Sequence record: NC_041975.1
Reading direction: 5' to 3' (one strand)
Length of the DNA: 64,000 nucleotides
Shown here: piece by piece, positions 1 to 17,848 of the stretch
Numbering within the stretch: the stretch's first letter is position 1
Layout of the letters: every line of letters starts with the position of its first letter
Notes under the pieces: generated by a model
Database searches by the model: none
Seen by the model: the letters and a program-made list of their open reading frames with translations, nothing else
What the model was told of the DNA's origin: nothing
Position numbers and translations under genes: made by a program

Positions 1-1
1 T

Positions 2-460
2 CACATCATCAACAAACTGCGTCGTCGGAACTACACCCCAACACAATGCCTCAAACTGATCCAGGCGGGTATTAAGCAAACCATCCCAGTGATCGATGAG
101 GTGTTAGATGAACTCCTCGCAGAAAGCCCTACAGCGTCGATACGGGTATATGTGCAACGAAACCCAACCCTGCGTTGGTTATCGAACCGCCGGTTCCATT
201 GCCGAACCATCAACCGCGATCCAAATGACATCAGTATCCGTATCAGTACCTTATCTATCAAATCCTCGAATGCGGACTTTGATGGCGATGAACTGAACGT
301 GATGTTACAGCTGGATAACGTCTCAGCGAACTATGCGGAAGCGTTTGGTTCACACAACTGTGTGCTGGACATGAACACCCCGCTGAAGATCTCTGGTGAC
401 GTGGGTCTGCCGGGTACGTTGATCTCGACCATGAACCGTTGGATGTACAGTAACGACTAA
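2..460 (+). CDS. Non-virion RNA polymerase beta' N-half (phiKZ gp55-like), 5'-truncated by the window
   Basis: Frame is open from base 2. It contains RNPTL and the catalytic NADFDGDELN motif of multisubunit RNAP beta', and its position matches the start of the phiKZ core block. Confidence 0.9.
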   Translation, partial: HIINKLRRRNYTPTQCLKLIQAGIKQTIPVIDEVLDELLAESPTASIRVYVQRNPTLRWLSNRRFHCRTINRDPNDISIRISTLSIKSSNADFDGDELNVMLQLDNVSANYAEAFGSHNCVLDMNTPLKISGDVGLPGTLISTMNRWMYSND

Positions 461-466
461 ACTTAT

Positions 467-497
467 GGCCAGGGGTAATTCCCTGGCCTTATTACCG
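467..497 (+). terminator. GC-rich hairpin after the nvRNAP gene
   Basis: GGCCAGGG-gtaatt-CCCTGGCC followed by TTATTACCG. Confidence 0.6.
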
Positions 498-511
498 ACG
501 GGATATTTTTT

Positions 512-1159
512 ATGGATAATTTGCTTGAAAGGGGACGGTTTCTTCTTGAGAATACAGCAGCAGCCATGACCCCATATCCTTACAACATCGTTTTCGTTAC
601 CACCCCAATGGATTGGGATGCGGTAGTCACTACCATGCACGCTAACGATCCTGCAGCCAACATCATTCAACATAAAGGACAGTTCACGACCCGACGTGAT
701 TACCAATATGTCATTTATCGAGATGAACATTGGTATATCGCTGGTGCGAACATGGGAAGTCTACCTTACAACCATTACTACACCGGTGCGATGCTCGGCA
801 TTGCCATGGACCTGGGGCATGAGATTATTATCGATATCAGCAACCGCATCGGGAATGACGCGACTGCGGCCCCAGCGATAACGGCGATCATGCACGATTG
901 GTTTATGGTTAACTGGCGGGAAGCTGTGTGCGTGACCCACGATAACTACCTGGCGTTTATTCCGGACGATGATTACTTGTACTTGAGTAACAACAAAAAG
1001 ATACTCGGGCAGGTGATTCGCGCACAAGAACAACTGGGATCACCTTTAGCATTGACGTCGGCGTTACAGCGTGAGTGTCAACGTCTGATGAACACCCAGG
1101 TGGTGATCGCACCCACAGGCTGGAACGCCACTACGTATTACAGCGGAGGTGAGGTATGA
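512..1159 (+). CDS. Hypothetical protein, paralog 1 of a tandem zincin-like triplet (HExxH degenerate)
   Basis: 215 aa. Shares FVT..DWD.V, GQFT, RE..R.MN and GW..TTYY blocks with the next two ORFs, and has LGHEIII where the others have HExxH. Confidence 0.75.
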   Translation: MDNLLERGRFLLENTAAAMTPYPYNIVFVTTPMDWDAVVTTMHANDPAANIIQHKGQFTTRRDYQYVIYRDEHWYIAGANMGSLPYNHYYTGAMLGIAMDLGHEIIIDISNRIGNDATAAPAITAIMHDWFMVNWREAVCVTHDNYLAFIPDDDYLYLSNNKKILGQVIRAQEQLGSPLALTSALQRECQRLMNTQVVIAPTGWNATTYYSGGEV

Positions 1160-1833
1160 CGTTTGCTGAAGCTGAACAGTATATTTACAGTCTCAGTCAA
1201 GACGGCGGGGTCTATAAACAAGGGTTCATCTTTGTGTTTGATCCCGAGTCGTGGGATAAGGTGAACAGGGCGTTGGATATCCTGGACAATAACCGCGGGA
1301 TCTGGGGGAAGAACGTTGGACAGTTCACAACCGCCGGCATGACGTCCTACGGGCCGGTGTCATCGAGGCTTAAAGGGTATATCGTTATTGCCGTCCATTT
1401 CACGGGTGAGCGTAAGCTGTTCAATCCAGGGTATCTGCAACATGTTTTGAATACAGCGACCCATGAGTTGGTCCATGCTGCTCAGTTCGCTGTTCGGGCG
1501 CAGAGCTACCATGATCCGTTGATGGCTGTAGAGCCACTGGCTTACCTGACCGGCTGGTTAATGGAGAAATGGATTTATGCAGTGTGGGAGAAGTTTAACG
1601 TCACCATCTCAGTAACCCCTGCTACTACCGGTCCACTGTCGTACAACATCCTGTTTGACCTGTTGTATCGGTTCAATGAACAGCGGCTGGCGCACCGGAT
1701 GGGTGATCTCACCATGACACAGATTCAGAGTGCTTTAGTTAGGGAGTCGATTAACAGCTTGAATAACGTGGCAGTGGTAAACGATATCGGTTGGTCATCA
1801 ACGACGTATCTTGATGGAGTTAACAAGAAATGA
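1156..1833 (+). CDS. Putative zinc-metallopeptidase-like protein, paralog 2
   Basis: 225 aa. Has ATHELVHAAQ (HExxH) and downstream VEPLAYLTGW, and overlaps its neighbours in ATGA fashion. Confidence 0.75.
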   Translation: MTFAEAEQYIYSLSQDGGVYKQGFIFVFDPESWDKVNRALDILDNNRGIWGKNVGQFTTAGMTSYGPVSSRLKGYIVIAVHFTGERKLFNPGYLQHVLNTATHELVHAAQFAVRAQSYHDPLMAVEPLAYLTGWLMEKWIYAVWEKFNVTISVTPATTGPLSYNILFDLLYRFNEQRLAHRMGDLTMTQIQSALVRESINSLNNVAVVNDIGWSSTTYLDGVNKK

Positions 1834-2456
1834 AGATGCCGGTCAGTCAGTATGTAGATAAGTTTCTATTAAGACTGTTCCCTTATCCGCGGCAGTTTAT
1901 CTTTGTCACCAGTGTTGCGGATTTTGATGCGGTGGTTACCGAACTGGCACGTCGGCAGACTGCGGCTGGGATTGGTAATAAATGGCTGAGCCACAGAGGG
2001 CATTTCAAAGGGAATGGGATTTGTGCTTCGGGGAATCAGATCTGTGTATTAGGTGCGCTTTATGATACCGGGACGCAGCTCAGCCCAGCTAACATCGCCG
2101 GGACGATCGGTACCATGCAGCATGAAATCCAACACATGTTACTGCATACCTGTGCACAGATTGGTTATAACCCGATGCGCGAGCACGAGCCATTTACGTA
2201 TTTAACGAAGTGGGTGTTTGAGTTGTTCCTGGCGTTTATGCGTAATTACCACGGCGTGATGATCACCGATGTGCAGCGGCAAGATACTGGCATGCTGAGT
2301 CGGTTGCAGAAGGGAGGGGCTTTTGAGTTACTGCACGCCCTGCCCGTTGAAAATGTTCGAGATTCATTAGCAAGAGAATCTCGTGCATTATTAAACAACG
2401 CGGTGGTCGTCAGTCCTATTGGCGCATCCCGTTCCACAACCTATTTCGAATTATAA
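1830..2456 (+). CDS. Putative zinc-metallopeptidase-like protein, paralog 3
   Basis: 208 aa. Has MQHEIQHML (HExxH) and HEPFTYLTKW, and ends in STTYFEL. Confidence 0.75.
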   Translation: MKMPVSQYVDKFLLRLFPYPRQFIFVTSVADFDAVVTELARRQTAAGIGNKWLSHRGHFKGNGICASGNQICVLGALYDTGTQLSPANIAGTIGTMQHEIQHMLLHTCAQIGYNPMREHEPFTYLTKWVFELFLAFMRNYHGVMITDVQRQDTGMLSRLQKGGAFELLHALPVENVRDSLARESRALLNNAVVVSPIGASRSTTYFEL

Positions 2457-2463
2457 TTAACCC

Positions 2464-2489
2464 GGCCAGGGAAACCTGGCCTGTATGTC
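2464..2489 (+). terminator. Hairpin closing the paralog triplet
   Basis: GGCCAGG-gaaa-CCTGGCC then TGTATGTC. The stem is the same as at 467. Confidence 0.55.
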
Positions 2490-2504
2490 AAAAAGGAAAG
2501 TAAC

Positions 2505-3206
2505 ATGGGTATGTATACCGGCGTCTCATTTCGTTTGAAGGTCAGAAAAAATGCACCCTTGCCGGTGTTAGAGTTCATGGATAAGTTCTTCATGGAAGGT
2601 GAAACACTGCAAGCAGTGAAAGACCTACAGAAAGAAACGGGTATCCAGTTCCAATCCACAGCCATTGCATTACCGGGTGATCAGTTTCATTACAGTGAAA
2701 TTGCCGATATGACCATGATGGTTCGCGGGCACTCTTCCAGTTTTGAAAGCTGGTACTGGCGTGTTAAAGAAGATAAGGGCGATTACTGGTTGTATGAAAC
2801 CCGCGCCAATACCAAACGCCCTCACCATGACCTGGCCGCCAACCTTATCCAGGCATTATTACCATGTCTGGTTATCGAAGAAGGTGAGGTGGTGCTGCGC
2901 TCCATTTATGAAGACAGCGCCCAAGAACGCGTTCTGGCATTGGTAAATGGCAAGATTATTGAGGAACGTGGTTATGAGTACGAGGATGAATACAATAGCC
3001 CGTGGAATGAAAAGGCGCCGATAGATTATGTCAAGGGTGATTTTGGTGCAATTGCACATATTCGCATCACGGAAGAAGAAGAGTTCACACCACCTTGGAC
3101 TTTACAGGAACTGCGGGCAGGTGAAGAAAAAGCACGGTTAGAGAAAGAAGCCGAGCACGAACGGATACGGGCAGAGGGTGGTGGTTTCGGTTTCGGTGGC
3201 TGGTAG
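2505..3206 (+). CDS. Hypothetical phage protein (MGMYTG N-terminus)
   Basis: 233 aa with an AAGGA SD. The N-terminus resembles a widespread uncharacterised phage family. Confidence 0.75.
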   Translation: MGMYTGVSFRLKVRKNAPLPVLEFMDKFFMEGETLQAVKDLQKETGIQFQSTAIALPGDQFHYSEIADMTMMVRGHSSSFESWYWRVKEDKGDYWLYETRANTKRPHHDLAANLIQALLPCLVIEEGEVVLRSIYEDSAQERVLALVNGKIIEERGYEYEDEYNSPWNEKAPIDYVKGDFGAIAHIRITEEEEFTPPWTLQELRAGEEKARLEKEAEHERIRAEGGGFGFGGW

Positions 3207-3234
3207 TTTTAATTAATTTAACCTGAGGTGCATT

Positions 3235-4263
3235 ATGAAACGTTTGGACGAACCAGAATTCTTGAAAGGTGAACTTAAGAATATCACCTATGTGGCCGGT
3301 ACTAAAAAGATCGGCTGGCTTGATAAACTTAATCGTGCACTAACTGAAAATAAAGGGAAGGTAACGCCGTATAAGTTTTTGCGGGCTCGCGATCTACACG
3401 ATGCGTTTAAAGACACGAAGTTCAGTACCAAAGAACAGAGTGAATTTCATAAACTGGTCTCTGATCCAGTGCAGGGAGACTTTTGGGTATCAAGTATGTT
3501 GATGCTGTGGTTATGGTCAATCAACCGCGTGGTGTACCGCCTTCCCGTTGAATTGTTTGCAGCCGCTAACCAGAATTATGATGTGGGTAACGTTCCTATC
3601 GAAACCCTTACCCGTATGCCGCAGTGGACTACGTGTATCGCAATGGACTGGGAAGGCATTGCAATAGATAAAGACGGGCATTGTCAGCGCGGTCTCTTTT
3701 ACAGTCTACAAATGCTCAACGGGAAAGAGTATCTGCAGATAGAGTTGTATGTCACGTTCCATCGCAGTGAATCAGGTACTGTTAAGTTTGGGTCGTATAC
3801 CCTGCTTATTGATACTTCCAAGACAAATGTCAGAGAAGGTATGGAGCAGGCACTGATTGATATCCCAAAATATCAAAACATGGGGATGTCTTCAAGTGTT
3901 CGTATCGGGCTTGATGAATCTGAAGATATGCTTAGCGATATTATCACTGCGATCTCGCTGGTTAACGGTGAACACCGAAAATCAGAACTGGGCAAGACGG
4001 ATATCAAATGGCCAGGCTACCAAATTCAAGGTACGTCAGGCTACAAGATCCGCCCGCGTTTGAAAGCAGTAGAGTTCATGGTGGGTGAAGAATACGTTCC
4101 ACAGTTACGTGCGGCTGGCATCTCTAACGAGCGTTCACAACGTAAGAGTCATATTCGTTGTGGTCACTGGCACACGTACTGGTTAGGTCCTCGTAGCGGT
4201 CCACGTACGCAAGAGCGGTACTGGCTAATGCCAATTGTTGTTTCTGGTAAAGCACCAGAATAA
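3235..4263 (+). CDS. acrVA2: AcrVA2/FinQ-family protein
   Basis: 342 aa with a GAGG SD. The C-terminus RKSHIRCGHWHTYWLG..RYWLMPIVVSG matches the AcrVA2 C-terminus as recalled (KRPHIRRGHWHGYWQG..VRWQPAVFVNSG). The central W...VYRL...PIETLTRMPQW block also aligns. Confidence 0.8.
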   Translation: MKRLDEPEFLKGELKNITYVAGTKKIGWLDKLNRALTENKGKVTPYKFLRARDLHDAFKDTKFSTKEQSEFHKLVSDPVQGDFWVSSMLMLWLWSINRVVYRLPVELFAAANQNYDVGNVPIETLTRMPQWTTCIAMDWEGIAIDKDGHCQRGLFYSLQMLNGKEYLQIELYVTFHRSESGTVKFGSYTLLIDTSKTNVREGMEQALIDIPKYQNMGMSSSVRIGLDESEDMLSDIITAISLVNGEHRKSELGKTDIKWPGYQIQGTSGYKIRPRLKAVEFMVGEEYVPQLRAAGISNERSQRKSHIRCGHWHTYWLGPRSGPRTQERYWLMPIVVSGKAPE

Positions 4264-4286
4264 TCCAATTTAAATAAGGGTAGTTT

Positions 4287-4988
4287 ATGAACGGTATGAA
4301 GATGATGATTGGTTCCCTGCCACTGAGCAGCATGATGGGTGGTAGTCGTTCAGACGCGGGGACTTTCAATCCTGCACCGTACGCCGCCCCTTTCCGCGCA
4401 GTTGGTGAGTACATCGCGGATGCGGCATTTGAGGATCGTGGGGTATTGGTTTCTGCAGACGGGATCGTTGCTACTGTGCGCGCCAAAAAGATGACCTTCC
4501 AGGAAGCCGCAGATGCCCGCGGTGCAGCCACCGGACTGTATGCCATTATGTTCCCAGTCACTAACGGGGCGAAAGACGATACTGTCGTGATCACCACTAC
4601 CAGTCAGGCTGTGTTGTTTAACTTACTGGCAGTTGAAGATCTCCCTGATGAACTGTTTGTGCAGTTTGGTCTGGCAACGAATGCCGCGACGGTGAAAGCC
4701 ATGACCAATGACAACAACGACCATATCCGGGTACTGGCCAATGCCGGCGGTATCGCCCCAAGCAATACCTCACCGTCCCATTTGATTGTGGATAAGCAGC
4801 GCAATCTGATTATTGGTCATATTGTAAAAGAAGGTGATGATCAAGCAGACTTCAGTATCTTCGCCACCTCACGTAAATCCAAATCATCACAGGACTACAT
4901 TATCAACGTGAGTACCGATGATAGTGATATCATCAAGCATATCGTCCAGGCTACAGTGGAAGAGATTGCACTGGGAGACGCTGTCTAG
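4287..4988 (+). CDS. Hypothetical protein
   Basis: 233 aa with an AAGGG SD, no recognised motif. Confidence 0.7.
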   Translation: MNGMKMMIGSLPLSSMMGGSRSDAGTFNPAPYAAPFRAVGEYIADAAFEDRGVLVSADGIVATVRAKKMTFQEAADARGAATGLYAIMFPVTNGAKDDTVVITTTSQAVLFNLLAVEDLPDELFVQFGLATNAATVKAMTNDNNDHIRVLANAGGIAPSNTSPSHLIVDKQRNLIIGHIVKEGDDQADFSIFATSRKSKSSQDYIINVSTDDSDIIKHIVQATVEEIALGDAV

Positions 4989-5056
4989 TCTGTAATTGCA
5001 GACAAAACCGGCGGATGATATAGCACCAGAAATTAACCGGAAGTAGGAGTAAAAGA

Positions 5057-5704
5057 ATGTCAGTCATGACAGGTGGTTTTGGCGCAATCAATGCGCTAAT
5101 GTCCAACGGCCGCCCGACTCAGGGTGCCATGGAGTATTTTAACAATCAGTATCAGGGCATGCTGCAAGCAGCGCAGCAAGTGGGTAGTGTAGCGATGCAG
5201 CAGATCTATCAGATCGCAACACACACCTATGAAAACCTGATGCAGACCCGTCCGTGGGAACTGGCAGAAGCAGCGTTGCGTCAAACAGTGCACATGTTTG
5301 ACCCGAACACGGTTCGTCAGCTTCTCAACCTGGCTGATATGCAAACCGCCAAACCGATCATGCAGCGGTGGGTGATGGCGCAACCGGATATCCGTCAGAT
5401 GTATCATCAGCAGCGTATCGATGGTTACAGCGAAACGTATGAAGATGCCCAGCCAGGGATGGTAGGTGCGGACCATTATGATTATCGTCGTGCAGCAAAC
5501 GGCATGTTGCAGTTTGCACACACTGAAGAGGTGCCGATGGCGTCTTGGCAGGCGACGACCTATTATGAGCGTCTGGTAGAAGGTGATAACGAACTGTCGT
5601 TCCATGAGAAGCGTGACATCCATGTAACCTGGGATGCGTGTCTGAATCTGATGAACACACAGGCGTATGATCCGACCTCCATCTTCAACATGAAGCTGGC
5701 GTAA
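5057..5704 (+). CDS. Conserved phiKZ-like core protein (position compatible with gp59/Imp3)
   Basis: 215 aa with an AGGAG SD and a DHYDYRRA.NGM motif. The gene-number match rests on synteny only. Confidence 0.55.
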   Translation: MSVMTGGFGAINALMSNGRPTQGAMEYFNNQYQGMLQAAQQVGSVAMQQIYQIATHTYENLMQTRPWELAEAALRQTVHMFDPNTVRQLLNLADMQTAKPIMQRWVMAQPDIRQMYHQQRIDGYSETYEDAQPGMVGADHYDYRRAANGMLQFAHTEEVPMASWQATTYYERLVEGDNELSFHEKRDIHVTWDACLNLMNTQAYDPTSIFNMKLA

Positions 5705-5712
5705 GTTAATCG

Positions 5713-5740
5713 GAGGAGGGGTGGCCCTCCTCTTATGCCG
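5713..5740 (+). terminator. Hairpin plus TTATGCCG element
   Basis: GAGGAGGG-gtgg-CCCTCCTC-TTATGCCG. Confidence 0.7.
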
Positions 5741-5752
5741 TTTGAGGGTAGC

Positions 5753-5977
5753 ATGGCAAAAAAGGAACTCACGATGAAGCGACTTCAGATAGACATCTCT
5801 GAACAGGGCTTTAGCAAACTCAATGCACTCAAGGTGAAAATGGAAACCACTGCCATGGGTAGCGTTGTCAGCCGCGCCTTATCGATTACCGATCGTTTGT
5901 TCACCGCCAAGGAGAAAGGCAGTAAGATCCTGATCGTGGATAAAGATGGTAATGTCACCGAAATCGAATTACTGTAG
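5753..5977 (+). CDS. Small ribbon-helix-helix-like DNA-binding protein
   Basis: KRLQIDIS strand followed by two helices (FSKLNALK, SVVSRALS), the CopG/Arc-like layout. Start chosen from the GAGG SD. Confidence 0.55.
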   Translation: MAKKELTMKRLQIDISEQGFSKLNALKVKMETTAMGSVVSRALSITDRLFTAKEKGSKILIVDKDGNVTEIELL

Positions 5978-5985
5978 AGGTTAAC

Positions 5986-6213
5986 ATGGCTTGGTCCAAA
6001 CGCCGTGCAAAGAAACGCATCATTCACTTACGTGGTTTTCATTATCGTGTTCAATCACGTAGTATCGCAATCTGGGAACAGTATCGCGAATATCATCAAA
6101 ATCGACCATTTGGATCTGGCGTTGGTTTATTGATGTTACTTGACCCTGAAACTGGTTGTCCAATAGGAGCTCATCGTGGCCTTAAGCAAAACAAAAATAA
6201 AGCGTCGTACTAA
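5986..6213 (+). CDS. Small basic hypothetical protein
   Basis: 75 aa with a GAGG SD. Confidence 0.6.
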   Translation: MAWSKRRAKKRIIHLRGFHYRVQSRSIAIWEQYREYHQNRPFGSGVGLLMLLDPETGCPIGAHRGLKQNKNKASY

Positions 6214-6460
6214 TGCGCTGTATAACTACAAAACGCTGGTTGAACGCATTAGCTATAAATGCATGATAGCCCACATCGATGCTCAGGGTATCAAGCTTGA
6301 ATTGAACCGCACGGGTTCGTCAATTAAAAGTGAAGACATTCCTGCTGCAAAAGAAGCCCGTCTTGCATTGAAACGCGAAATCGTCCGTCTGCGGAATATC
6401 CAGGGGCGTCGTCGTATCGTGAATGCCGGTAAGATCAAAGCGGCAATCAGCCAGTATTAA
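6176..6460 (+). CDS. Basic hypothetical protein
   Basis: 94 aa, followed by a terminator; start uncertain. Confidence 0.6.
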   Translation: MALSKTKIKRRTNALYNYKTLVERISYKCMIAHIDAQGIKLELNRTGSSIKSEDIPAAKEARLALKREIVRLRNIQGRRRIVNAGKIKAAISQY

Positions 6461-6463
6461 TAG

Positions 6464-6492
6464 AAGGGACTTCGGTCCCTTTATTTTTTTTG
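6464..6492 (+). terminator. Intrinsic terminator
   Basis: AAGGGAC-ttcg-GTCCCTT plus a long T tract. Confidence 0.85.
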
Positions 6493-6520
6493 TCTTGAAT
6501 AATGAAATTTTTACGCTGTA

Positions 6521-6553
6521 GAAAATCTTAGACCTATATAACGGCACTGATAG
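6521..6553 (+). promoter_or_regulatory. Conserved 33-bp phage promoter-like element, copy 1
   Basis: GAAAATCTTAGACCTATAT-N8-TGATAG. Recurs at 7127 and 29412 with identical spacing, each time upstream of an SD and ATG. Confidence 0.75.
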
Positions 6554-6582
6554 AGTAATCTAAATTAACTTACGAGGTTATC

Positions 6583-7113
6583 ATGAAAAACACTACTTTT
6601 CTAATTGAGACCCTGAAACGTACCTTGGAAGAGCTGGACCAGGCAACGTTATCAACTGAAGAAAAAATTGAATTAACCACCATGGTTGAGAAAGAACATT
6701 TTGCTAAGCTGTTCGGTGTCCGCGCAGAAGAAACCACTCAGTTAAGTGAGCGCGATTTCTCTAAACTGACCGGTTATCAGTACAACAGTGTTTACGCGGG
6801 GTTAGATTTGGTTGGTAATTTTGACTGGGTGATCACGGCGGATGGCGCAGTCGTAACAAGAGAAATGCCTCATCACGGCAGTAACCATTGGTTGCCACCG
6901 CACAGGCAATTTATATTCAGACTGATCGATGAAGGTCGTGAAATATTTAATGAAGGCACTAGACTGCTTGTTATCAGAATTGAGAACACCATCACCAAAG
7001 AGGTCTTTTCAATTAACTTTGAAGTTGCTGATATTCAAATCGGCAGTGCGGTTGTTAAAATGGTTGAGCGTTATCTGTTCGATTATTACAGGGTCAGCGT
7101 CAAGAAACTGTAA
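6583..7113 (+). CDS. Hypothetical (probably early) protein
   Basis: 176 aa with a GAGG SD, downstream of the element. Confidence 0.75.
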   Translation: MKNTTFLIETLKRTLEELDQATLSTEEKIELTTMVEKEHFAKLFGVRAEETTQLSERDFSKLTGYQYNSVYAGLDLVGNFDWVITADGAVVTREMPHHGSNHWLPPHRQFIFRLIDEGREIFNEGTRLLVIRIENTITKEVFSINFEVADIQIGSAVVKMVERYLFDYYRVSVKKL

Positions 7114-7126
7114 AATATGAGTTGCA

Positions 7127-7159
7127 GAAAATCTCAGACCTATATGACTGGGGTGATAA
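7127..7159 (+). promoter_or_regulatory. Conserved 33-bp element, copy 2
   Basis: GAAAATCTCAGACCTATAT-N8-TGATAA. Confidence 0.75.
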
Positions 7160-7216
7160 AGAGTAGTGAATACTCTTAACCCCTAACCCAATTAACCTTA
7201 AGTATGGAGTAGTATC

Positions 7217-7507
7217 ATGACTGTAACTTTCTCTCAGCAAATGCAGGTTGTCGAATCTATCGCTGTGATGCAGGAAAAAGCAATGGAACTGCAAGTTGCT
7301 ACCAAAGCGTGTTACGACGAAGTCACCCGACTGGCCAACCGACTGGCTGACATCAACGATCCACTCGGCTTTCAGAAAGCCTATGAAGAATATCGTGCCA
7401 AGCTGGCAGAAGCGGATGTATTAGCCGATGCTACTCGCCTGGCTTACAACATGTCAGACGCTGCACTGAAAACCATCCTGGGTGAAGCTAACCCAACCTT
7501 TCATTAA
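7217..7507 (+). CDS. Small coiled-coil hypothetical protein
   Basis: 96 aa, Ala-rich and helical, GGAG SD. Confidence 0.7.
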   Translation: MTVTFSQQMQVVESIAVMQEKAMELQVATKACYDEVTRLANRLADINDPLGFQKAYEEYRAKLAEADVLADATRLAYNMSDAALKTILGEANPTFH

Positions 7508-7546
7508 TAGTTAATTACTCATCGTCATTACGCCTCGGAGAAACTC

Positions 7547-7756
7547 ATGAGCGATTTTATTAGCAACCTGTTCGAAATCGCTATTGCAGTTTCTTCTGTA
7601 GTGGCGATGGTTAAATTGATTAAATCTGATAATGCCTATATTGCAGAAACAGTTCGTATCATCGATGCCTGCGCTTCTTTACAGGAAGGGCAAGTAATTC
7701 AGGGCGAAGTGGTTAACACCAAAGCCCACACAACCAACTTATACATCACCCATTAA
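7547..7756 (+). CDS. Small protein with hydrophobic N-terminus
   Basis: 69 aa with LFEIAIAVSSVVAMV, GGAG SD. Confidence 0.65.
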   Translation: MSDFISNLFEIAIAVSSVVAMVKLIKSDNAYIAETVRIIDACASLQEGQVIQGEVVNTKAHTTNLYITH

Positions 7757-7778
7757 TCTACTTGTAAGGAATACACCT

Positions 7779-8240
7779 ATGTCAAACTCTATGTTCATCT
7801 GCCTGTCACTGTTAGCGGTTATCTCTGTCTCTGGTGGTATCGCCTTTGCCAAGAGCCTGTCACCGACCCATGCCATGATGACCGCCTTTGCTTACTTACG
7901 TGAGCAACTCGGTGATGACGCAGCACAGTACGAATACGATAAACGCTCACACCTTCTTTGCATGACAAACCTGGTGGAAACTAACTATGCCCTGGTCTGC
8001 GGTAAGCACTTTGAACGCGCAGAACAAAAACGTGCATGGTTAGTTAAGGAAGCAGAAGAGATCCAGCTCACCCCGCGTCAACAACTGATGCTACTGGACT
8101 CCTTACTGAACCTGAACACCCGTCCTGAACAAGCAAAGAAAATTGTTAAAGTACGTTCAACCAAAGAGATCGTTGACTTGGCTGCGAAGTATGCGAGCGA
8201 CAACCGTCGTATCGAAGCTCCGCTGGCCTTGTTCCGCTAA
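7779..8240 (+). CDS. Membrane-anchored or secreted hypothetical protein
   Basis: 153 aa with N-terminal hydrophobic segment MFICLSLLAVISVSGGIAFA. Confidence 0.65.
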   Translation: MSNSMFICLSLLAVISVSGGIAFAKSLSPTHAMMTAFAYLREQLGDDAAQYEYDKRSHLLCMTNLVETNYALVCGKHFERAEQKRAWLVKEAEEIQLTPRQQLMLLDSLLNLNTRPEQAKKIVKVRSTKEIVDLAAKYASDNRRIEAPLALFR

Positions 8241-8274
8241 TGTAAGCTGTAGTGTATTGGTCACCTCATGACCG

Positions 8275-8306
8275 GAGCTCACCCTAACCGGTGGGCTCTT
8301 TTTTTT
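8275..8306 (+). terminator. Intrinsic terminator
   Basis: GAGCTCACC-ctaacc-GGTGGGCTC plus T tract. Confidence 0.75.
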
Positions 8307-8362
8307 GTCTTCTTTTTTTTGTTCGGGGATTATATGTAGTCCATATTAGCTAAGAGGACATT

Positions 8363-8767
8363 ATGGCAGAGCGTGTAGTTCCAACCATGTCCGTAACCGG
8401 GTACGTAACCGGCGTGACTGAAACCATTGACCGGATGTTTGCCTACTGGCTGACCGCACAATACTCTCAAACGTATCTTGCGCGCGGTAACATCCACTCC
8501 CTTCAATATTTGATCCAGCAGTATGACGGTAACCCAGAACGTCTGTGTGATGCGGTGGTGAAAGACCTCAAGAACTATTTTACGGGTCCGTTTGATGCCG
8601 CCACGGTTACCTGTAATCCACGTTATGCGACCAGTGAGCGTGATGAGAAGTTCTATATGCTGGAGATCGATATCAAAGTCTCTAATGGCGATATCGGTTA
8701 TGATGTTGGTCGCCGTCTGCTAGAGATTGAAGACGGTATCTTTAAACGCATTGTAGGTACTCTGTAA
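8363..8767 (+). CDS. Conserved phiKZ-like core protein, possibly gp25-like baseplate fold
   Basis: 134 aa with a GAGGA SD. It starts the core block that leads to SbcD; the fold guess is from size and pattern only. Confidence 0.5.
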   Translation: MAERVVPTMSVTGYVTGVTETIDRMFAYWLTAQYSQTYLARGNIHSLQYLIQQYDGNPERLCDAVVKDLKNYFTGPFDAATVTCNPRYATSERDEKFYMLEIDIKVSNGDIGYDVGRRLLEIEDGIFKRIVGTL

Positions 8768-9369
8768 TGGCACAAACCGAACACGATAAAATGATGCACC
8801 AACGGGCAGGGTCGATTGAGCGCCGACTGGCACAGGCCGCCCAGCATGAACGTAATCCCCAGATCCAGGAAGCGGAGTTCACCCGGGTATTCCTGCCGAT
8901 GTTTGTTGGTGGGGGTGAATACATTAATCAGGATGCCTGGGTGGCAGTTGCCGGCTCTGTTAATAATGAAGTCGATGTCTTCCGCGGGCAAGAGTACCTT
9001 TATACCCTGCCAGCCTTAGCCATCCCGATTCGCTCTGAGATCTCCAGTCGTAGCCAAAATGGTCGCATGGGTGATAACTGGATGGGCACAGGCTTAAACG
9101 CCGCAGACGATCCAGGCTCAATTGAGAGCGTGATGTCGATCGATGCCAAGGGTAAGCAGGTTGCGTTAGCCAGTACTGCTGAGGAGCACATGGCACGCTG
9201 GGATGAGGTGTTCAAACGTTACGGGCTGGACTACCGCGTAATCCGTGCTGACCTCCATGAACGTAAAACAGGTCAGAAAGTTAATCCCAACATTATCGAT
9301 CAATCAGATAAGGCATTAGCGACTAAACAGGTTGAGCTCGATGACAACGGTGATTACGAAGACTACTAA
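8767..9369 (+). CDS. Conserved phiKZ-like core hypothetical protein
   Basis: 200 aa, translationally coupled (TAATG), with EAEFTRVFLPMF and W..VAG blocks. Confidence 0.7.
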   Translation: MAQTEHDKMMHQRAGSIERRLAQAAQHERNPQIQEAEFTRVFLPMFVGGGEYINQDAWVAVAGSVNNEVDVFRGQEYLYTLPALAIPIRSEISSRSQNGRMGDNWMGTGLNAADDPGSIESVMSIDAKGKQVALASTAEEHMARWDEVFKRYGLDYRVIRADLHERKTGQKVNPNIIDQSDKALATKQVELDDNGDYEDY

Positions 9370-9379
9370 AAAACCTGGC

Positions 9380-10486
9380 ATGGTACGGATTATTCAGACA
9401 GGCGATATTCACCTCTGTCATAAGCGCACCCCAACGGCGAACATTATCCGTACACTGAACTACATCTTCTATGAAAACGAATCCTTGGCTGAAACCGACC
9501 TTATCATCCTTGCCGGGGATGTTTGGGATACCCTGGTGACCATGCCTAATGACGATGCATTATTAGCTCGTCAATGGATTCGTAAGTTTGTCGAAGATTG
9601 CGCATACCACAATGTAATCTTAGATGTGTTAGAAGGCACTCCTGATCATGATTGGGAGCAGTCTTCTGAGTTCACCCTCTTTGAAACCAATTGTGAAGTG
9701 CGCTACATCAAAACCCTGCAGATTGTCCGTCACGAGCACTTGGATTTAAATATCCTTTATGTGCCCGATGAATGGCGCCCAACCATCGAAGCGATCTGGG
9801 AAGATGTGTGTGTGGCAATGACTGAAGCTGGACTGGACAAAGTGGATGTCGGGGTGGTGCACGGGGGATTCGATTTTAACTTCCCGCCAGAGTACAACAT
9901 CAAAGGCCACAGTGCTGAGCGCTTTAGCAGTATTGTCAAACATGCGGTGTTTGCTAACCACATCCACAAAGCCCAGAGCTTTATGAAAGTGCACGGCCCA
10001 GGTTCACCGGATCGATTAGCACAGGGTGAGGAAGGGGACAAAGGTTACCATCGGGTGGTGATTGATCAGAAGACCGATCAGATGCGTATCCAGTGGATTA
10101 AGAACCCACACGCCTGGACCCATATCGCAATCAACGTTGCAGATATGTCGGTTGAGGAGATCGTCGCCAAAGCCAAAGCGATCGCAGCACCACTAAGAGC
10201 CGGCAGTTATCTGCGTTTTGATAACGGTGATCCCTTAGTGGTGAAAGCGGTACTGTGGGCATTGAAAGCAGAAATCCCGCATGTGATATTGGAATACAAA
10301 AACAAGAAGCAAGCAGGGATCACGCAAACGCACCAAACTTATGCCAAGAAGTTTTCTGGCACCCACATTAACCGCAACAATGCCAAAGAGTCGATCGTCG
10401 GCTGGTTGCAGGGTAAAGGGTTAACGGACGACTCACAGGGTCAGTATTTAAGCGATATCTTACAGCGCGCCATGGCGCTGAAGTAG
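9380..10486 (+). CDS. sbcD: Mre11/SbcD-like metallophosphoesterase nuclease (phiKZ gp65-like)
   Basis: Motifs TGDIHL, LAGDVWD, LEGTPDHD, VVHGGF and ANHIH. Start placed at MVRIIQ. Confidence 0.88.
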   Translation: MVRIIQTGDIHLCHKRTPTANIIRTLNYIFYENESLAETDLIILAGDVWDTLVTMPNDDALLARQWIRKFVEDCAYHNVILDVLEGTPDHDWEQSSEFTLFETNCEVRYIKTLQIVRHEHLDLNILYVPDEWRPTIEAIWEDVCVAMTEAGLDKVDVGVVHGGFDFNFPPEYNIKGHSAERFSSIVKHAVFANHIHKAQSFMKVHGPGSPDRLAQGEEGDKGYHRVVIDQKTDQMRIQWIKNPHAWTHIAINVADMSVEEIVAKAKAIAAPLRAGSYLRFDNGDPLVVKAVLWALKAEIPHVILEYKNKKQAGITQTHQTYAKKFSGTHINRNNAKESIVGWLQGKGLTDDSQGQYLSDILQRAMALK

Positions 10487-10496
10487 TGAGGGTGTT

Positions 10497-11297
10497 ATGG
10501 CTGACAGGACCATGGGGATCTTGCCGATGTCAGTCGGCACCTCCCTTTCATTTGAAGCATTAATGGCAAAACCCATTGAACCGATTGAAACCTTGGTGTT
10601 GAACATCGGGACCATCTTTCGTAATGTCTATCAGGCGTATGATACCGATGACCGCGATCGCTTAGGGATTGATAAGTTGCATGACGATGTGATTGCAGAC
10701 ATGTCAGCGATTTATGACATCTTAAAAGATATCGGGAAAGCGGGGGTGCCAGATTACAAACTGTATCACGGGCGTTATGAACGGTTAGCTTCCGCCTTTC
10801 CACTGGCGAAGATCTGGGAGCCTTCTTCGGATATTCAGAAGACGTACGCACGACTTGAACGCAACGTCCTGGAGAAGGTGATCAAGACAATGCGGGGGTT
10901 AGTGCAAGAGGTGGATCACACCTTACCGATTTCCGTAAAGAATACCTATGTGATGACCCATCACATCGTAGACCTGGTTGTGCCGGCTGGTTACGGTGAG
11001 ATTACGTTGGTGGAATCCCATACAGGCGCCTTGAAGAAGAAACCGTTATGGCACACCAAACTCACCAACGGGCGTTCGCTTGAACGTATTCCGTTTAACC
11101 GACTGACCTTGCAGGTGTTCGGTGATAATTCTGTGAACTTCAAAGCCAACAGCTTTAAATACAAAGCGGCACTGATGAAGCTTGCAGAGGAGAACAAGTG
11201 GACACCCATGGCAACCCGTGATCGTATCAAGCTTGGCATTGAAACGTTAAAGGACGCGCAGCTGAAAGCGGACTTGTCAAAAATGCTCAGTGTATAA
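10497..11297 (+). CDS. Conserved phiKZ-like core protein (gp66 position)
   Basis: 266 aa with a GAGG SD and motifs LNIGTIFRN, LVESHTG.LK and QVFGD. Confidence 0.65.
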   Translation: MADRTMGILPMSVGTSLSFEALMAKPIEPIETLVLNIGTIFRNVYQAYDTDDRDRLGIDKLHDDVIADMSAIYDILKDIGKAGVPDYKLYHGRYERLASAFPLAKIWEPSSDIQKTYARLERNVLEKVIKTMRGLVQEVDHTLPISVKNTYVMTHHIVDLVVPAGYGEITLVESHTGALKKKPLWHTKLTNGRSLERIPFNRLTLQVFGDNSVNFKANSFKYKAALMKLAEENKWTPMATRDRIKLGIETLKDAQLKADLSKMLSV

Positions 11298-13139: not shown

Positions 13140-14684
13140 ATGATGTTTAAGTACACCACCAAATCGACCTCTGAGAAGGTATGGTTAAACACAATCATAG
13201 TTGTCAGTCGTCATGGCGAAGAGATTGTGTTTAACGAAAACAACTTCTTCAAGTCGGAAGAGAAGGACCATAAAGGAACCTTCGACGAACTGAATCTCTA
13301 TCTCTTGCGTTGCCTGAGTAACGAGCAACGTGATCGGATGTTTGAGTTCTATAAGCAAATCAGTTATATCCTGAAAACGGAACTGTCGGTCACGAAGGTC
13401 CTTCTGCCAAAGTTGCAGCCTTTGGTTAAAGGGATCTACGACCTGGTTAGCTTAAGCGACCTGAACGTCTTCATGTATGAAAACAAACTGACGCACATCC
13501 CGAACAGCGTACTGGATACCATCCCGTCCTCGAAAGAGTACCCGACGATGACCACGTATGTGAAAGCGGATTACGTCAAGCTGGTTAACCTGTCGGTGTT
13601 GTTGCATCTGATGGCGCCGATCATTGCGGACTATGTCAGCAAGGTCAGTGAGTCAACCGGCAAGCAGTTTAAAGAACACGCCGCCTTACCGTTACTGGAA
13701 TACACCAACATCATGTATTCTGATGAGATGGTCAAGCTGCGTAACTTCGTGACCGCCAACTGCAGTAAAAAGCCAGTGCCGTTATCAGCCACCTTAGAAG
13801 GGATGTCAGAAGAGTCGTTCCCGGATTGGATGCTGGCGTCGGTCATTGCACGTAAGCTGTGTATCAACCATGTACGGCGTGGGGATGAGAACGGGCATCT
13901 GGTTGCTGCGGTGTTTGCCTACATCAACTACAACATCAAACTGGATGGTAAGTTTGGTGGCGGGGTCATGCCAAAGAAAGAGCGTCGGGGTCTGGGAGAA
14001 GATGAACGCGAGAAAGCGGTCATTGATAACTGGAAGATGAAAGAGGATGTGGACAAGATCGATATCTTAGCCTGTGCTGTTGGCTTTGATGATCCGGTTG
14101 CTGCTGCCAAATTCATTGAGCCTGACATCGATCCAAACATGGTGATCCGTTGCCTGAATGCGATTCCACAAGCCTGGAACTTCAGCATGACTCGTCATCA
14201 GAGCATTCTGTTGCAGTGGGTAGTGGGTGAGCTTCTGCCGCATATAGGTGATACGTATGTGCCGCCGTTGACCGTTGAGTATTACGATTACGATGTCTGC
14301 GTGAAGTTGGTCGGGATTGCACAAGCGGTACTGTGGCATCGGGGTTATCCGAAGCTTGCAGTGTTTGCTGCGACTTATCCGTCTGAAGTGGATGCCGGGG
14401 GGATGCCGAATGCCGTGATGCCATTAGAACTGAAAGTGATGGCAGAGCTGGAAGCGTATTACGGTAATGTGCGTCTGGGTAAACGTCAGGACAGCAGCGA
14501 TGGCTTGGTGCATAAAACCATCAACACCATGGTTACCTCATTGTTAGAAGATGATTATCAGGTCGTAGGCCCTGATGAATTGTTAGCGTTATCTGGGGTG
14601 GTAGATTTCGAACGTCGAATCGTCATTCCTGAAAGCCTATATTACGATATTGCTGGCTACATTCGTTTCTTAGCCACTCGTTAA
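13140..14684 (+). CDS. nvRNAP sigma-like subunit (phiKZ gp68-like)
   Basis: 514 aa, helical. Size and position fit, five genes upstream of the beta-C/beta'-C pair. Confidence 0.7.
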   Translation: MMFKYTTKSTSEKVWLNTIIVVSRHGEEIVFNENNFFKSEEKDHKGTFDELNLYLLRCLSNEQRDRMFEFYKQISYILKTELSVTKVLLPKLQPLVKGIYDLVSLSDLNVFMYENKLTHIPNSVLDTIPSSKEYPTMTTYVKADYVKLVNLSVLLHLMAPIIADYVSKVSESTGKQFKEHAALPLLEYTNIMYSDEMVKLRNFVTANCSKKPVPLSATLEGMSEESFPDWMLASVIARKLCINHVRRGDENGHLVAAVFAYINYNIKLDGKFGGGVMPKKERRGLGEDEREKAVIDNWKMKEDVDKIDILACAVGFDDPVAAAKFIEPDIDPNMVIRCLNAIPQAWNFSMTRHQSILLQWVVGELLPHIGDTYVPPLTVEYYDYDVCVKLVGIAQAVLWHRGYPKLAVFAATYPSEVDAGGMPNAVMPLELKVMAELEAYYGNVRLGKRQDSSDGLVHKTINTMVTSLLEDDYQVVGPDELLALSGVVDFERRIVIPESLYYDIAGYIRFLATR

Positions 14685-14719
14685 CTTAATTTAATCTACA
14701 CCGTTAGGAGTCACCCAAG

Positions 14720-16237
14720 ATGTTACCTACCCAAAACATTCAGTTCGAAGGCTATGTTGAGAAAGCTGCTATCTGCCGTACACCAGCTTATCAGGACATG
14801 TACCGTCGACCGTACAGCATGAATATCAGTCAGGACACCGCATCCGTTATTGGTAACATGAGTGCCGGTGTGGATTATTCTCGTGAGCGTTTAGCGCCGA
14901 TTGCCGCATCGGTCATTGCGCCACAGACTTACGTTGAATCGGTTTGTAACGTACCAGAGGGCTGGGGTTCTGAGCGTTGTCTCTTCATTCTGAAGATCGT
15001 TCACGGTCGTCCGGGTGACCAGGGTCTGAACAAACGTGTGCAGTATCTGACCGGCTACACCAGTCACATGGGCATGATGCCAAGTCAGATGCGTGCGAAT
15101 GATGTTGTTGTTGATGACAACATGCGTCTGTTCTTTAACACCAGTATGCTGTTTAACGAAACCAGCCATATCGATGGCTATGGTCGTAAGCTCGTCACCG
15201 CCATGCCGTTGATGGCAAGTCAGTTGGTAATGGGTCAGCACGGTGGGGTGCATGGTCATAACGATCGTACGTTGCGTCCTGAAGATGTTTACTCAGCAAT
15301 CAATGTTGGACAGCTGATTCAGCAGAACAACCAGTATGATCAAAGCCGTGGTACCAATGGTCCGATTGGTCAGCTGTATGATGGTCGTACTGCTTTCCAA
15401 CCTGGTCAGCCGTATAAGCTTTCTCAGCTGAATAACCTGGTGCCTTCAAACTACCTCAGTAAAGTGCTGACCGGCGCAGCCACCGAACAGCTGACCTTAG
15501 GTGGTCAACGTGCAAACCCAGCGGACACCAGCAATCAGATCGCAACTGGCCTGAACGAAGGTTATCTGTCTAACGACCTGACCCTGCAGCACATCCTGGA
15601 TCGCACCGGTCTGCGTGAAAACTGCTCAATCACATTTGGTGAATTGCGTCGTATTCTGCCGAACATTGATGCACCGGGTATTTTGACCAAAGCGGGTATG
15701 GAAGGTGTCGGTACTGGTCAGGTTGCCGGTGCAGTAGGTGGTGCTGGTTCTGAACATCATCAGGGTTCGAACTATGAAACCGTGATTGCCAACATGCTAA
15801 ACAATGTGACCACTGCACTGATGATGGATCTGATGATCGGTGAGATTCATTGTAATGGCGGTAACATGACCGTAGCCGATGTGGCGACTGGTACAATGAG
15901 CGGTCAGTTCCTGTTGAACACACCGTATGCAACTTCCTTCGTGGATGGTCGTGATGCGGTGGCGTTGTGTGAATCGTTTAAGCTGCGTCTGGTGCGTGAG
16001 TTCCTGTCAAGCTTTACCGGCCACAACCATGTGCCAATCGGTTTTGCAATCCATGCAAGTCTGATGGCCGAAACGGTTATTGATGTCTCTTACAATAACC
16101 AACCGAAGATTCGCTTCGTGTTCCCGGTCTTTGCGAACGCGTCGTATACCCCGATTATCACTGGCGATCAGAACACTCTGAACTCCATTGCCGTACACAC
16201 ACGTGAACTGGTCCAGCAGCTGACCAACGTCTTTTAA
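14720..16237 (+). CDS. picA: Probable phage-nucleus import factor PicA/Imp1 (phiKZ gp69-like)
   Basis: 505 aa directly after the gp68-like gene. The QDMYRRPY, GW...RC.F and TGYT blocks are as recalled for the family; mainly synteny. Confidence 0.6.
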   Translation: MLPTQNIQFEGYVEKAAICRTPAYQDMYRRPYSMNISQDTASVIGNMSAGVDYSRERLAPIAASVIAPQTYVESVCNVPEGWGSERCLFILKIVHGRPGDQGLNKRVQYLTGYTSHMGMMPSQMRANDVVVDDNMRLFFNTSMLFNETSHIDGYGRKLVTAMPLMASQLVMGQHGGVHGHNDRTLRPEDVYSAINVGQLIQQNNQYDQSRGTNGPIGQLYDGRTAFQPGQPYKLSQLNNLVPSNYLSKVLTGAATEQLTLGGQRANPADTSNQIATGLNEGYLSNDLTLQHILDRTGLRENCSITFGELRRILPNIDAPGILTKAGMEGVGTGQVAGAVGGAGSEHHQGSNYETVIANMLNNVTTALMMDLMIGEIHCNGGNMTVADVATGTMSGQFLLNTPYATSFVDGRDAVALCESFKLRLVREFLSSFTGHNHVPIGFAIHASLMAETVIDVSYNNQPKIRFVFPVFANASYTPIITGDQNTLNSIAVHTRELVQQLTNVF

Positions 16238-16251
16238 GGAAAAGATAAACC

Positions 16252-17796: not shown

Positions 17797-17810
17797 TCTA
17801 TAAATCTGAT

Positions 17811-17845
17811 CGGCATAAGGAGAGGCTACGGCCTCTCCTCTTTCA
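17811..17845. terminator. Bidirectional hairpin with CGGCATAA at a convergent junction
   Basis: CGGCATAA-GGAGAGG-ctacgg-CCTCTCC-tcttt. Confidence 0.7.
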
Positions 17846-17848
17846 GAG

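What the first reader, a model, noticed from the sequence alone, without database searches (positions are those of the whole stretch)
3235..4263. AcrVA2/FinQ-like protein in a nucleus-forming jumbo phage
Seen: the C-terminus reads GEEYVPQLR...RKSHIRCGHWHTYWLGPR...RYWLMPIVVSG and the middle reads WSINRVVYRL...VPIETLTRMPQWTTCIAM. Known: both blocks match the Moraxella AcrVA2 sequence as I recall it. AcrVA2 binds the nascent Cas12a chain and triggers co-translational decay of its mRNA, and plasmid FinQ is a relative. Inference: phiKZ-like phages already shield their DNA from Cas9/Cas12 inside the nucleus, so Cas12a may not be the target here. The protein may instead silence another host protein by nascent-chain-guided mRNA destruction, for example an RNA-targeting CRISPR, an abortive-infection protein, an anti-jumbo-phage defence or conjugation. 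It sits in an accessory island between core genes.
Basis: partly seen in the sequence, partly recalled or inferred. Interest (0 to 1): 0.85.

Follow-up and report, generated by a model that had tools for sequence, protein, structure and literature searches.

The report
AcrVA2/FinQ-family gene in Erwinia jumbo phage
This gene of the nucleus-forming Erwinia phage Special G is a real but already annotated member of the AcrVA2/FinQ family, which lowers the mRNA of one chosen target, and what it targets here is unknown because the host has no Cas12a.

Summary
The ORF at 3235-4263 (+, 342 aa) is real and carries the quoted blocks. The window is Erwinia phage vB_EamM_Special G (Agricanvirus, Chimalliviridae). 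The gene is gp231, labelled 'putative protein FinQ' in GenBank, and its relatives carry the Pfam hit PF26125 'AcrVA2-like'.

Homology to AcrVA2 is firm. Profiles hit PDB 7ci1 at E 3.8e-49 over the full length. A confident AlphaFold model matches only AcrVA2 in the PDB. The residues that AcrVA2 needs (H286/R288/H291) are conserved as H306/R308/H311. gp231 is nearer to IncI1 FinQ, with a full-length pairwise E of 3e-12.

The gene is under purifying selection. It sits in the same slot in four Agricanvirus lineages and is missing as a whole from eight E. amylovora isolates, RAY included.

The most likely function is AcrVA2-like silencing of one non-Cas12a target at the mRNA level. The target is unknown. 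Published work already reports family members in huge phages and proposes non-Cas12a targets, so this is a new member of a known kind and of moderate interest. Its best asset is the set of natural carrier and non-carrier phages, about 98-99% identical in this region.

The parts
3225..3230 (+). Ribosome-binding site (GAGGTG) 4 nt upstream of the gp231 start codon
   Evidence: Read directly from the sequence. The same element precedes the AH06 and MadMel orthologs.
3235..4263 (+). gp231 (SPECIALG_231), 342 aa, AcrVA2/FinQ-family protein (Pfam PF26125 'AcrVA2-like')
   Evidence: ORF. GenBank label 'putative protein FinQ'. Profile hit to PDB 7ci1 at E 3.8e-49. Foldseek finds only AcrVA2. PHROG 6160 at E 1e-88. 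PF26125 precomputed for it and its relatives.
3235..3489 (+). Residues 1-85: helical N-terminal region, poorly conserved across the family, shared with FinQ at the extreme N-terminus; candidate specificity region
   Evidence: The mean share of the commonest residue across the family is 0.20-0.23. dN is 0.17-0.45 between Agricanvirus orthologs. BLASTP against IncI1 FinQ aligns from residue 1. Most distant relatives align only from about residue 83 onward.
3490..3645 (+).
   Evidence: W94, P121 and P129 are at least 94% conserved in 65 sequences. W94 aligns with AcrVA2 W79, whose mutation partly impairs AcrVA2.
3646..3921 (+). Residues 138-229: beta-sheet middle region, the most variable part within the gp231 clade; second candidate specificity region
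   Evidence: Strands 149-193 in the model. Within-clade identity 0.61-0.68 and family share 0.20-0.24. dN up to 0.51.
4126..4245 (+).
   Evidence: This is the highest conservation in both the clade (0.95) and the family (0.57), with dN of 0.05-0.11. It aligns to AcrVA2 residues 279-316.
4150..4173 (+). Codons for H306-I-R308-C-G-H311-W-H313, the H-x-R-x2-H-x-H motif
   Evidence: H306 and R308 are invariant, H311 is 98% and H313 is 94% conserved in 65 sequences. They align with AcrVA2 H286, R288 and H291, whose alanine substitutions abolish cas12a mRNA down-regulation.
2505..3206 (+). gp230, upstream neighbour (233 aa, hypothetical); directly adjacent to the gp232 homolog in phages that lack gp231
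4287..4988 (+). gp232, downstream neighbour (233 aa, hypothetical)

Best explanation
gp231 is a functional member of the AcrVA2/FinQ protein family (Pfam PF26125) carried as an accessory gene by a nucleus-forming Erwinia jumbo phage. By analogy with the two studied members, it most likely acts in the cytoplasm, the only compartment with ribosomes during chimallivirus infection. There it would lower the mRNA and protein level of one particular target gene. The variable N-terminal and middle regions (residues 1-85 and 138-229) would recognise the target, in AcrVA2 the nascent N-terminal polypeptide. The invariant C-terminal H306-x-R308-x2-H311 block would carry out or trigger loss of the mRNA. 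The target is very probably not Cas12a. A host-encoded or co-resident-element protein made during infection is most likely, because agricanviruses leave the host chromosome intact. Shown here: family membership, fold, conservation of the functionally required residues, purifying selection, and the presence/absence pattern. Inferred: the mechanism, the compartment, the domain roles and the class of target. I put identity at about 0.97 and the mechanism as stated at about 0.5.
For: Family membership rests on profile hits to AcrVA2 over the full length (E 3.8e-49), a drift-controlled chain of homology, and a fold match to AcrVA2 only. gp231 also aligns over its full length with IncI1 FinQ (BLASTP E 3e-12, HHalign 97.7%). 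H286, R288 and H291 are required for AcrVA2 to lower cas12a mRNA, and W79 contributes. All four equivalents (H306, R308, H311, W94) are conserved in gp231 and nearly invariant in 65 family members. FinQ lowers F tra transcripts, so both studied members reduce specific mRNAs. dN/dS between Agricanvirus orthologs is 0.06-0.12. Change is concentrated in residues 1-85 and 138-229, and the C-terminal block is nearly fixed. That is the pattern expected for a variable recognition part joined to a constant effector part. E. amylovora has type I-E cas genes and a remnant I-F array, with no Cas12a reported. Marino et al. found most of about 1,800 orthologs in genomes without Cas12a. RAY, from the same genus, forms a nucleus and does not degrade host DNA, so host genes can still be expressed during infection. 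The gene has an RBS, a composition like its neighbours, and sits in a co-directional array with no terminator before gp235.
Against: There are no functional data for gp231 or for any phage-borne homolog other than AcrVA2 itself. gp231 shares only 14-16% identity with AcrVA2 in the structural alignment, and the overall TM is only about 0.5. Domain arrangement or the N-terminal part therefore differs. The equivalent of AcrVA2 D89 (moderate effect when mutated) is P104 in gp231 and is also not Asp in FinQ. How AcrVA2 destroys mRNA is itself unknown. FinQ has classically been described as causing transcription termination rather than co-translational decay. Eight of eleven sequenced agricanviruses infect E. 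amylovora without the gene, so it is dispensable on common hosts.
Confidence: 0.5

Rival explanations
1. gp231 has a FinQ-type role in conflict between mobile elements. It would silence genes of a co-resident plasmid, prophage or co-infecting phage, for example transfer or exclusion genes, rather than a chromosomal host defence. This uses the same biochemical family with a different class of target.
For: gp231 is closer to plasmid FinQ than to AcrVA2, with a full-length alignment that includes the N-terminus (E 3e-12), against a C-terminal-only direct match to AcrVA2. FinQ inhibits F transfer by lowering tra transcripts. FinQ-like genes sit on 545 conjugative plasmids of enterobacteria. Marino et al. 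suggest the family mediates conflict between mobile elements.
Against: Identity to FinQ is only 21%. Conjugation is unlikely to matter during a lytic infection. No target element is known in Erwinia. The regions presumed to give specificity are not conserved between gp231 and FinQ beyond the first ~15 residues.
Confidence: 0.2
2. The family fold is kept but the mode of action is not guided by a nascent chain. gp231 would act directly on nucleic acid, as a sequence- or structure-specific RNase or as a factor causing premature transcription termination, which is the classical FinQ model.
For: FinQ was described as terminating tra transcription at multiple sites. The invariant His/Arg/His cluster could be a metal-independent phosphodiester-cleaving site. 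AcrVA2's own decay step has not been assigned to any host nuclease.
Against: For AcrVA2, codon-scrambled targets are still silenced and amino-acid changes abolish silencing, which argues against nucleic-acid recognition in the one member tested rigorously. No nuclease or nucleic-acid-binding fold is found by Foldseek, Pfam or NCBIfam. The R308-x4-H313 spacing resembles the HEPN Rx4-6H motif only superficially, because it lies in beta-strands.
Confidence: 0.15
3. gp231 is a true anti-CRISPR against Cas12a, useful in natural hosts that carry a type V-A system.
For: It belongs to the same family as AcrVA2, with all three essential C-terminal residues conserved.
Against: The known host has type I-E only. 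The phage nucleus already excludes DNA-targeting nucleases (background). The regions outside the two conserved blocks are unrelated in sequence to AcrVA2. Most family members occur without Cas12a.
Confidence: 0.05
4. gp231 is a dispensable passenger with no current function in this phage.
For: The gene is absent as a whole from eight of eleven sequenced agricanviruses that infect the same host species.
Against: The ORF is intact. dN/dS is 0.06-0.12 across four lineages. All family-invariant residues are kept. The gene holds the same syntenic position in Special G/MadMel, AH06 and two metagenomic lineages, with divergence like that of its neighbours.
Confidence: 0.05

Closest known systems
AcrVA2 (Moraxella bovoculi prophage; PDB 7CI1/7CI2)
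   Same: It has the same family and fold: profile E 3.8e-49 over the full length and Foldseek probability 1.00. The size is similar (323 vs 342 aa). The two conserved blocks are the same. W79, H286, R288 and H291 are conserved as W94, H306, R308 and H311. Both are encoded on a mobile element.
   Different: Identity is only 14-16%, and TM is about 0.5 with rmsd 7.5-7.8 A. The direct pairwise match is limited to the C-terminal 38 residues. The D89 equivalent is Pro. gp231's host lacks Cas12a. gp231 is not next to an AcrVA1-like partner and sits in a lytic jumbo phage rather than a prophage. No activity has been tested.
FinQ (fertility inhibition protein of IncI1 plasmids such as R820a and R621a)
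   Same: This is the closest characterised relative. The BLASTP alignment runs the full length, 1-337 against 3-347, at E 3e-12, with HHalign 97.7% over 302 columns. The length matches (R820a FinQ is 342 aa). The extreme N-terminus is similar and the C-terminal H-x-R-x2-H-W-H-x-Y-W block is the same. GenBank already uses this name for gp231.
   Different: Identity is 21%. FinQ is plasmid-borne and acts on F tra transcripts, a target with no evident counterpart in a lytic phage infection of Erwinia.
AcrVA2-like proteins of other huge or jumbo phages (megaphage ORFs in Marino et al. Extended Data Fig. 11; homologs in Salmonella SA002, Erwinia RisingSun, Yoloswag, Y3 and SNUABM phages, Dickeya JA13, and Klebsiella/Serratia ~300-kb phages)
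   Same: They belong to the same family: tblastn hits in 68 phage records, and Foldseek BFVD TM of 0.82 for the top viral hit (UniProt A0A7D3QKX0, unnamed; 334 aa, 36% identity, which fits the SA002 homolog) and 0.66 for RisingSun. All are uncharacterised, and mostly in hosts without known Cas12a.
   Different: These are separate clades at 23-36% identity, located in unrelated genome positions. Some of these phages are chimalliviruses (Risingsunvirus). Others belong to genera not listed in that family, so the gene is not tied to the nucleus-forming lifestyle.

Membership tests
AcrVA2/FinQ family (Pfam PF26125 'AcrVA2-like') | Significant full-length sequence-profile similarity to AcrVA2 | tested here: met
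   Profile A2 hits 7ci1_A at E 3.8e-49 over residues 7-319 of 323. The clade-only profile matches the clade-free family at 99.9% and E 7.8e-36. The clade-free family hits 7ci1 at E 7.8e-46. PF26125 is precomputed for gp231 and its relatives. The local Pfam-A scan gave no hit, apparently because that model was not matched or not held there.
AcrVA2/FinQ family (Pfam PF26125 'AcrVA2-like') | AcrVA2 three-domain fold | tested here: met
   The AF2 model (pLDDT 87.6) finds only 7ci2_A, 7ci1_B and 7ci1_A, at E 2.6e-11 to 6e-10, probability 1.00 and TM 0.49-0.56. The moderate TM indicates a different domain arrangement or N-terminal part.
AcrVA2/FinQ family (Pfam PF26125 'AcrVA2-like') | C-terminal H-x-R-x2-H motif (AcrVA2 H286/R288/H291), required for mRNA down-regulation | tested here: met
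   H306, R308 and H311 align with these residues (the PDB chain numbering is offset by one from the paper). H306 and R308 are invariant and H311 is 98% conserved in 65 sequences.
AcrVA2/FinQ family (Pfam PF26125 'AcrVA2-like') | Conserved Trp of the first block (AcrVA2 W79) and nearby Asp (D89), both of moderate effect in AcrVA2 | tested here: inconclusive
   W94 matches W79 and is 97% conserved. The D89 position is P104 in gp231 and Ser in FinQ, so the Asp is not a family-wide feature.
AcrVA2/FinQ family (Pfam PF26125 'AcrVA2-like') | Translation-dependent, polypeptide-guided loss of a specific mRNA | not testable with these tools
   This needs expression data. None exist for gp231 or for any phage carrying it.
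Anti-CRISPR type V-A (functional class) | Inhibits Cas12a immunity, with Cas12a present in the host | not testable with these tools
   Activity could not be tested here. The literature describes only type I-E cas genes and a remnant I-F array in E. amylovora. I did not scan Erwinia genomes for cas12a.
FinQ fertility inhibition (functional class) | Encoded on a conjugative plasmid and inhibits F-like transfer by lowering tra transcripts | tested here: not met
   gp231 is on a lytic jumbo phage genome, not a plasmid. Sequence relatedness to FinQ is met, but the biological setting is not. Inhibition of transfer was not tested.
HEPN RNases (considered because R308-x4-H313 fits Rx4-6H) | All-helical HEPN fold with the motif at a helix start | tested here: not met
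   In the model the motif lies in beta-strands 306-308 and 311-317. Foldseek finds no HEPN structure and there is no Pfam hit.

The most novel reading that the evidence does not exclude
In agricanviruses, phage DNA is shielded and transcribed inside the nucleus, while the host chromosome stays intact and expressible in the cytoplasm. There, gp231 would be a protein-sequence-guided silencer that removes the mRNA of one host or resident-element protein as it is being translated. Candidates include a defence that the nucleus cannot block, such as an RNA-targeting, translation-targeting or abortive-infection system. This would make the AcrVA2 family a general counter-defence module whose target specificity differs between members, and whose presence or absence in otherwise near-identical phages tracks the defence repertoire of particular host strains.
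Probability: 0.3. Interest if true: 0.7.

Novelty: new member of a known kind. Interest (0 to 1): 0.38.

Why it matters
AcrVA2 is so far the only bacterial example of gene silencing guided by the amino-acid sequence of a nascent protein. The field's open question is what the ~1,800 relatives in genomes without Cas12a target. This locus does not answer that. It does offer an unusually clean natural comparison: Special G and MadMel carry the gene, while RAY, Simmy50 and six others lack exactly this one gene and are about 98-99% identical around it. All infect the same host, whose chromosome survives infection. Descriptive expression data on these existing isolates could reveal a non-Cas12a target. 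The practical corrections are small. The GenBank 'FinQ' label is reasonable. The 'mycothiosynthase' label on the RisingSun homolog is probably wrong.

Tried and rejected
- **Family libraries.** The local Pfam-A scan of gp231 and of 65 relatives found nothing relevant. NCBIfam gave only a chance RNase HII hit at E 0.12. PHROGs gave an unnamed family.
- **Direct PDB search.** Single-sequence and close-clade profile searches of the PDB were only marginal (E 0.013 and 0.009, C-terminus only). A wider profile was needed.
- **First AlphaFold model.** The model from 21 sequences was poor (pLDDT 54), although it already found AcrVA2.
- **HEPN-like reading of R308-x4-H313.** Rejected: the motif lies in beta-strands and there is no HEPN fold hit.
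- **Recent horizontal insertion of gp231 into Special G.** Rejected: four lineages share the slot, divergence matches the neighbours (64% against 37-86%), and composition is not unusual.
- **A remnant of the gene's 3' end in Simmy50.** Not significant: 45 of 500 shuffles score as well.
- **A second paralog.** None in the window and only one place in the Special G record.
- **Paralogy of neighbours.** gp230 and gp232 show none, and neither do gp247-249.
- **Prior listing of this protein.** I looked for Special G in the ortholog table of Marino et al. and in the supplement of Prichard et al. It was not found, but the first file is truncated in the library, so this is inconclusive.
- **Sigma-70 promoter and terminator scan.** It gave no more sites than shuffled sequence, and it is not informative for a phage with its own RNA polymerases.

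Full report
**What is there.** The window is Erwinia phage vB_EamM_Special G (KU886222.1), about positions 186,001-250,000, matched at 100% identity. The ORF at 3235-4263 (+) is intact, 342 aa, and preceded by a GAGGTG ribosome-binding site. It is gene 231 of the record and is already annotated 'putative protein FinQ'.

**Is it AcrVA2/FinQ-like?** Yes.
- gp231 alone gives 7ci1_A (AcrVA2) as the top PDB hit, but only at E 0.013 and only over the C-terminal block. A profile of its six close relatives does no better.
- A profile search of 1.8 billion representative proteins found 324 relatives, mostly 310-350 aa. A 65-sequence alignment seeded on gp231 then hit AcrVA2 at E 3.8e-49 over residues 7-319 of 323.
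- To exclude profile drift, I compared the gp231 clade alone with 51 distant members that exclude the clade. HHalign gave 99.9%, E 7.8e-36, over 283 columns. The clade-free set alone hits AcrVA2 at E 7.8e-46.
- A template-free AlphaFold2 model built on the 65-sequence alignment is confident (pLDDT 87.6, pTM 0.88). In the PDB it matches only the three AcrVA2 chains (E 2.6e-11 to 6e-10, TM 0.49-0.56), with nothing else below E 0.07.
- All relatives carry the precomputed Pfam hit PF26125, which the tools name 'AcrVA2-like'. The local Pfam copy did not report it.

**Functional residues.** Marino et al. (bioRxiv 10.1101/2022.11.29.518452) showed that H286A, R288A and H291A abolish AcrVA2's down-regulation of cas12a mRNA, and that W79A and D89A weaken it.
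- In the alignments these residues correspond to H306, R308, H311, W94 and P104 of gp231 (the PDB chain is numbered one higher than the paper).
- H306 and R308 are invariant. H311, H313, W94, W316 and W330 are at least 94% conserved across 65 members.
- The Asp is not conserved in gp231 or in FinQ.

**Closer to FinQ than to AcrVA2.** I used the Salmonella phage SA002 homolog (36% identical to gp231) as a bridge. This found 604 plasmid records, 545 of them conjugative, including an IncI1 plasmid with an annotated finQ. gp231 aligns with that FinQ ORF over its full length, from residue 1 (BLASTP E 3e-12, 21% identity; HHalign 97.7%, 302 columns). FinQ itself hits AcrVA2 at E 4.6e-17. The GenBank label was therefore reasonable.

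**Genomic and evolutionary setting.**
- Agricanvirus is classified in Chimalliviridae. Its member RAY forms a phage nucleus and, unusually, does not degrade host DNA (Prichard et al.). The window carries the split RNA-polymerase genes typical of phiKZ-like phages.
- gp231 lies in a co-directional array of small genes between the RNAP beta-prime gene gp226 and the SbcD-like gp242. Gene content in this array varies among relatives.
- Among sequenced agricanviruses, Special G, MadMel (99.7% identical protein) and AH06 (64%) carry the gene. Eight others lack it: Simmy50, RAY, Rebecca, Ea35-70, Mortimer, Bosolaphorus, Desertfox and Deimos-Minion. It is missing as a whole, with the two neighbouring genes left adjacent; I read that junction directly only in Simmy50.
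- AH06 and two long metagenomic Agricanvirus-like contigs (283 kb and 225 kb) have the ortholog in the same slot. Its divergence (64%) falls inside the range of its neighbours (37-86%), and its composition is unremarkable. The gene is therefore ancestral at this position and was lost once as a whole gene in the RAY-like lineage. It is not a recent insertion.
- dN/dS is 0.06-0.12 (dS is saturated, so this is approximate). Non-synonymous change is concentrated in residues 1-85 and 138-229, and the C-terminal block is almost fixed.

**Wider distribution.** tblastn finds relatives in 68 phage records. Nearly all of the 40 listed are 235-307 kb jumbo phages of Erwinia, Klebsiella, Serratia, Salmonella and Dickeya. 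Foldseek confirms several of them. RisingSun is a chimallivirus. Others, such as the Yoloswag, Y3 and SNUABM phages, belong to genera not listed in that family. The gene is therefore a recurrent jumbo-phage accessory and not specific to the nucleus-forming lifestyle.

**Mechanism.**
- Shown: family, fold, essential residues, selection and accessory status.
- Inferred: gp231 lowers the mRNA of one target in the cytoplasm, using variable regions for recognition and the His/Arg/His block as the effector.
- Cas12a is an unlikely target. E. amylovora has type I-E cas genes only (PMC9004355), the nucleus excludes DNA-targeting nucleases, and most family members occur without Cas12a.
- Because the host chromosome survives agricanvirus infection, selective silencing of a host or resident-element gene is plausible.
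- The biochemical step that removes the mRNA is unknown even for AcrVA2. FinQ was classically described as causing transcription termination (PMC8744291). A direct action on nucleic acid therefore remains a rival.

**Novelty.** Family membership is in the public annotation and in Pfam. AcrVA2-like proteins in huge phages were noted in 2019 and in 2022-23. The idea of non-Cas12a targets was stated in that paper's abstract. New here are the placement nearer to FinQ, the chimallivirus context, the ancestral-slot and whole-gene-loss pattern, and the mapping of variable against constant regions. This is a new member of a known kind, and of moderate interest.

**Transparency.** One notebook entry and two script outputs record the approximate ends of the presence/absence polymorphism. 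These coincide with the gene's own bounds.

Noticed in passing
Erwinia phage RisingSun MF459646.1 128440-129135 (hit H45): The RisingSun homolog of gp231 is annotated 'putative mycothiosynthase'. By sequence (E 5e-12) and predicted fold (Foldseek TM 0.66, E 9e-20) it is an AcrVA2-like protein, so the label is probably wrong.
   Followed up: partly
L007 328-1419 (E. coli IncI1 plasmid NZ_CP145638.1): finQ is annotated as 780 nt (259 aa), but the open frame is 363 aa and gp231 aligns from residue 3 of the long frame. The annotated start is probably too far downstream. R820a FinQ is 342 aa.
   Followed up: partly
window 512-2456 (+): gp227, gp228 and gp229 are three consecutive weak paralogs, at 25-28% identity and E 1e-6 to 7e-13. 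Their function is unknown. They are conserved in AH06 and in the metagenomic relatives.
   Followed up: partly
window 1-10500; L003, L005, L008: The stretch between the RNAP beta-prime gene gp226 and the SbcD-like gp242 varies in gene content. MadMel has one extra 813-nt gene, Deimos-Minion has an HNH endonuclease, and AH06 and a 283-kb contig have several extra small ORFs.
   Followed up: no
window 13140-17796 (+): Three consecutive ORFs of 514, 505 and 514 aa (gp247-249) have nearly equal lengths but no detectable BLASTP similarity to one another. Nothing is known about their function.
   Followed up: partly
window 16660-17907 (-): A 415-aa open frame lies on the minus strand, mostly inside gp249 on the plus strand. 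It is not annotated in the record and is probably a chance antisense frame.
   Followed up: no
plasmid collection: About 85 Acinetobacter plasmids carry an AcrVA2/FinQ-like gene annotated only as hypothetical; most of those listed are ~38-47 kb. The family is thus common on small plasmids of a genus where its role has not been examined.
   Followed up: no
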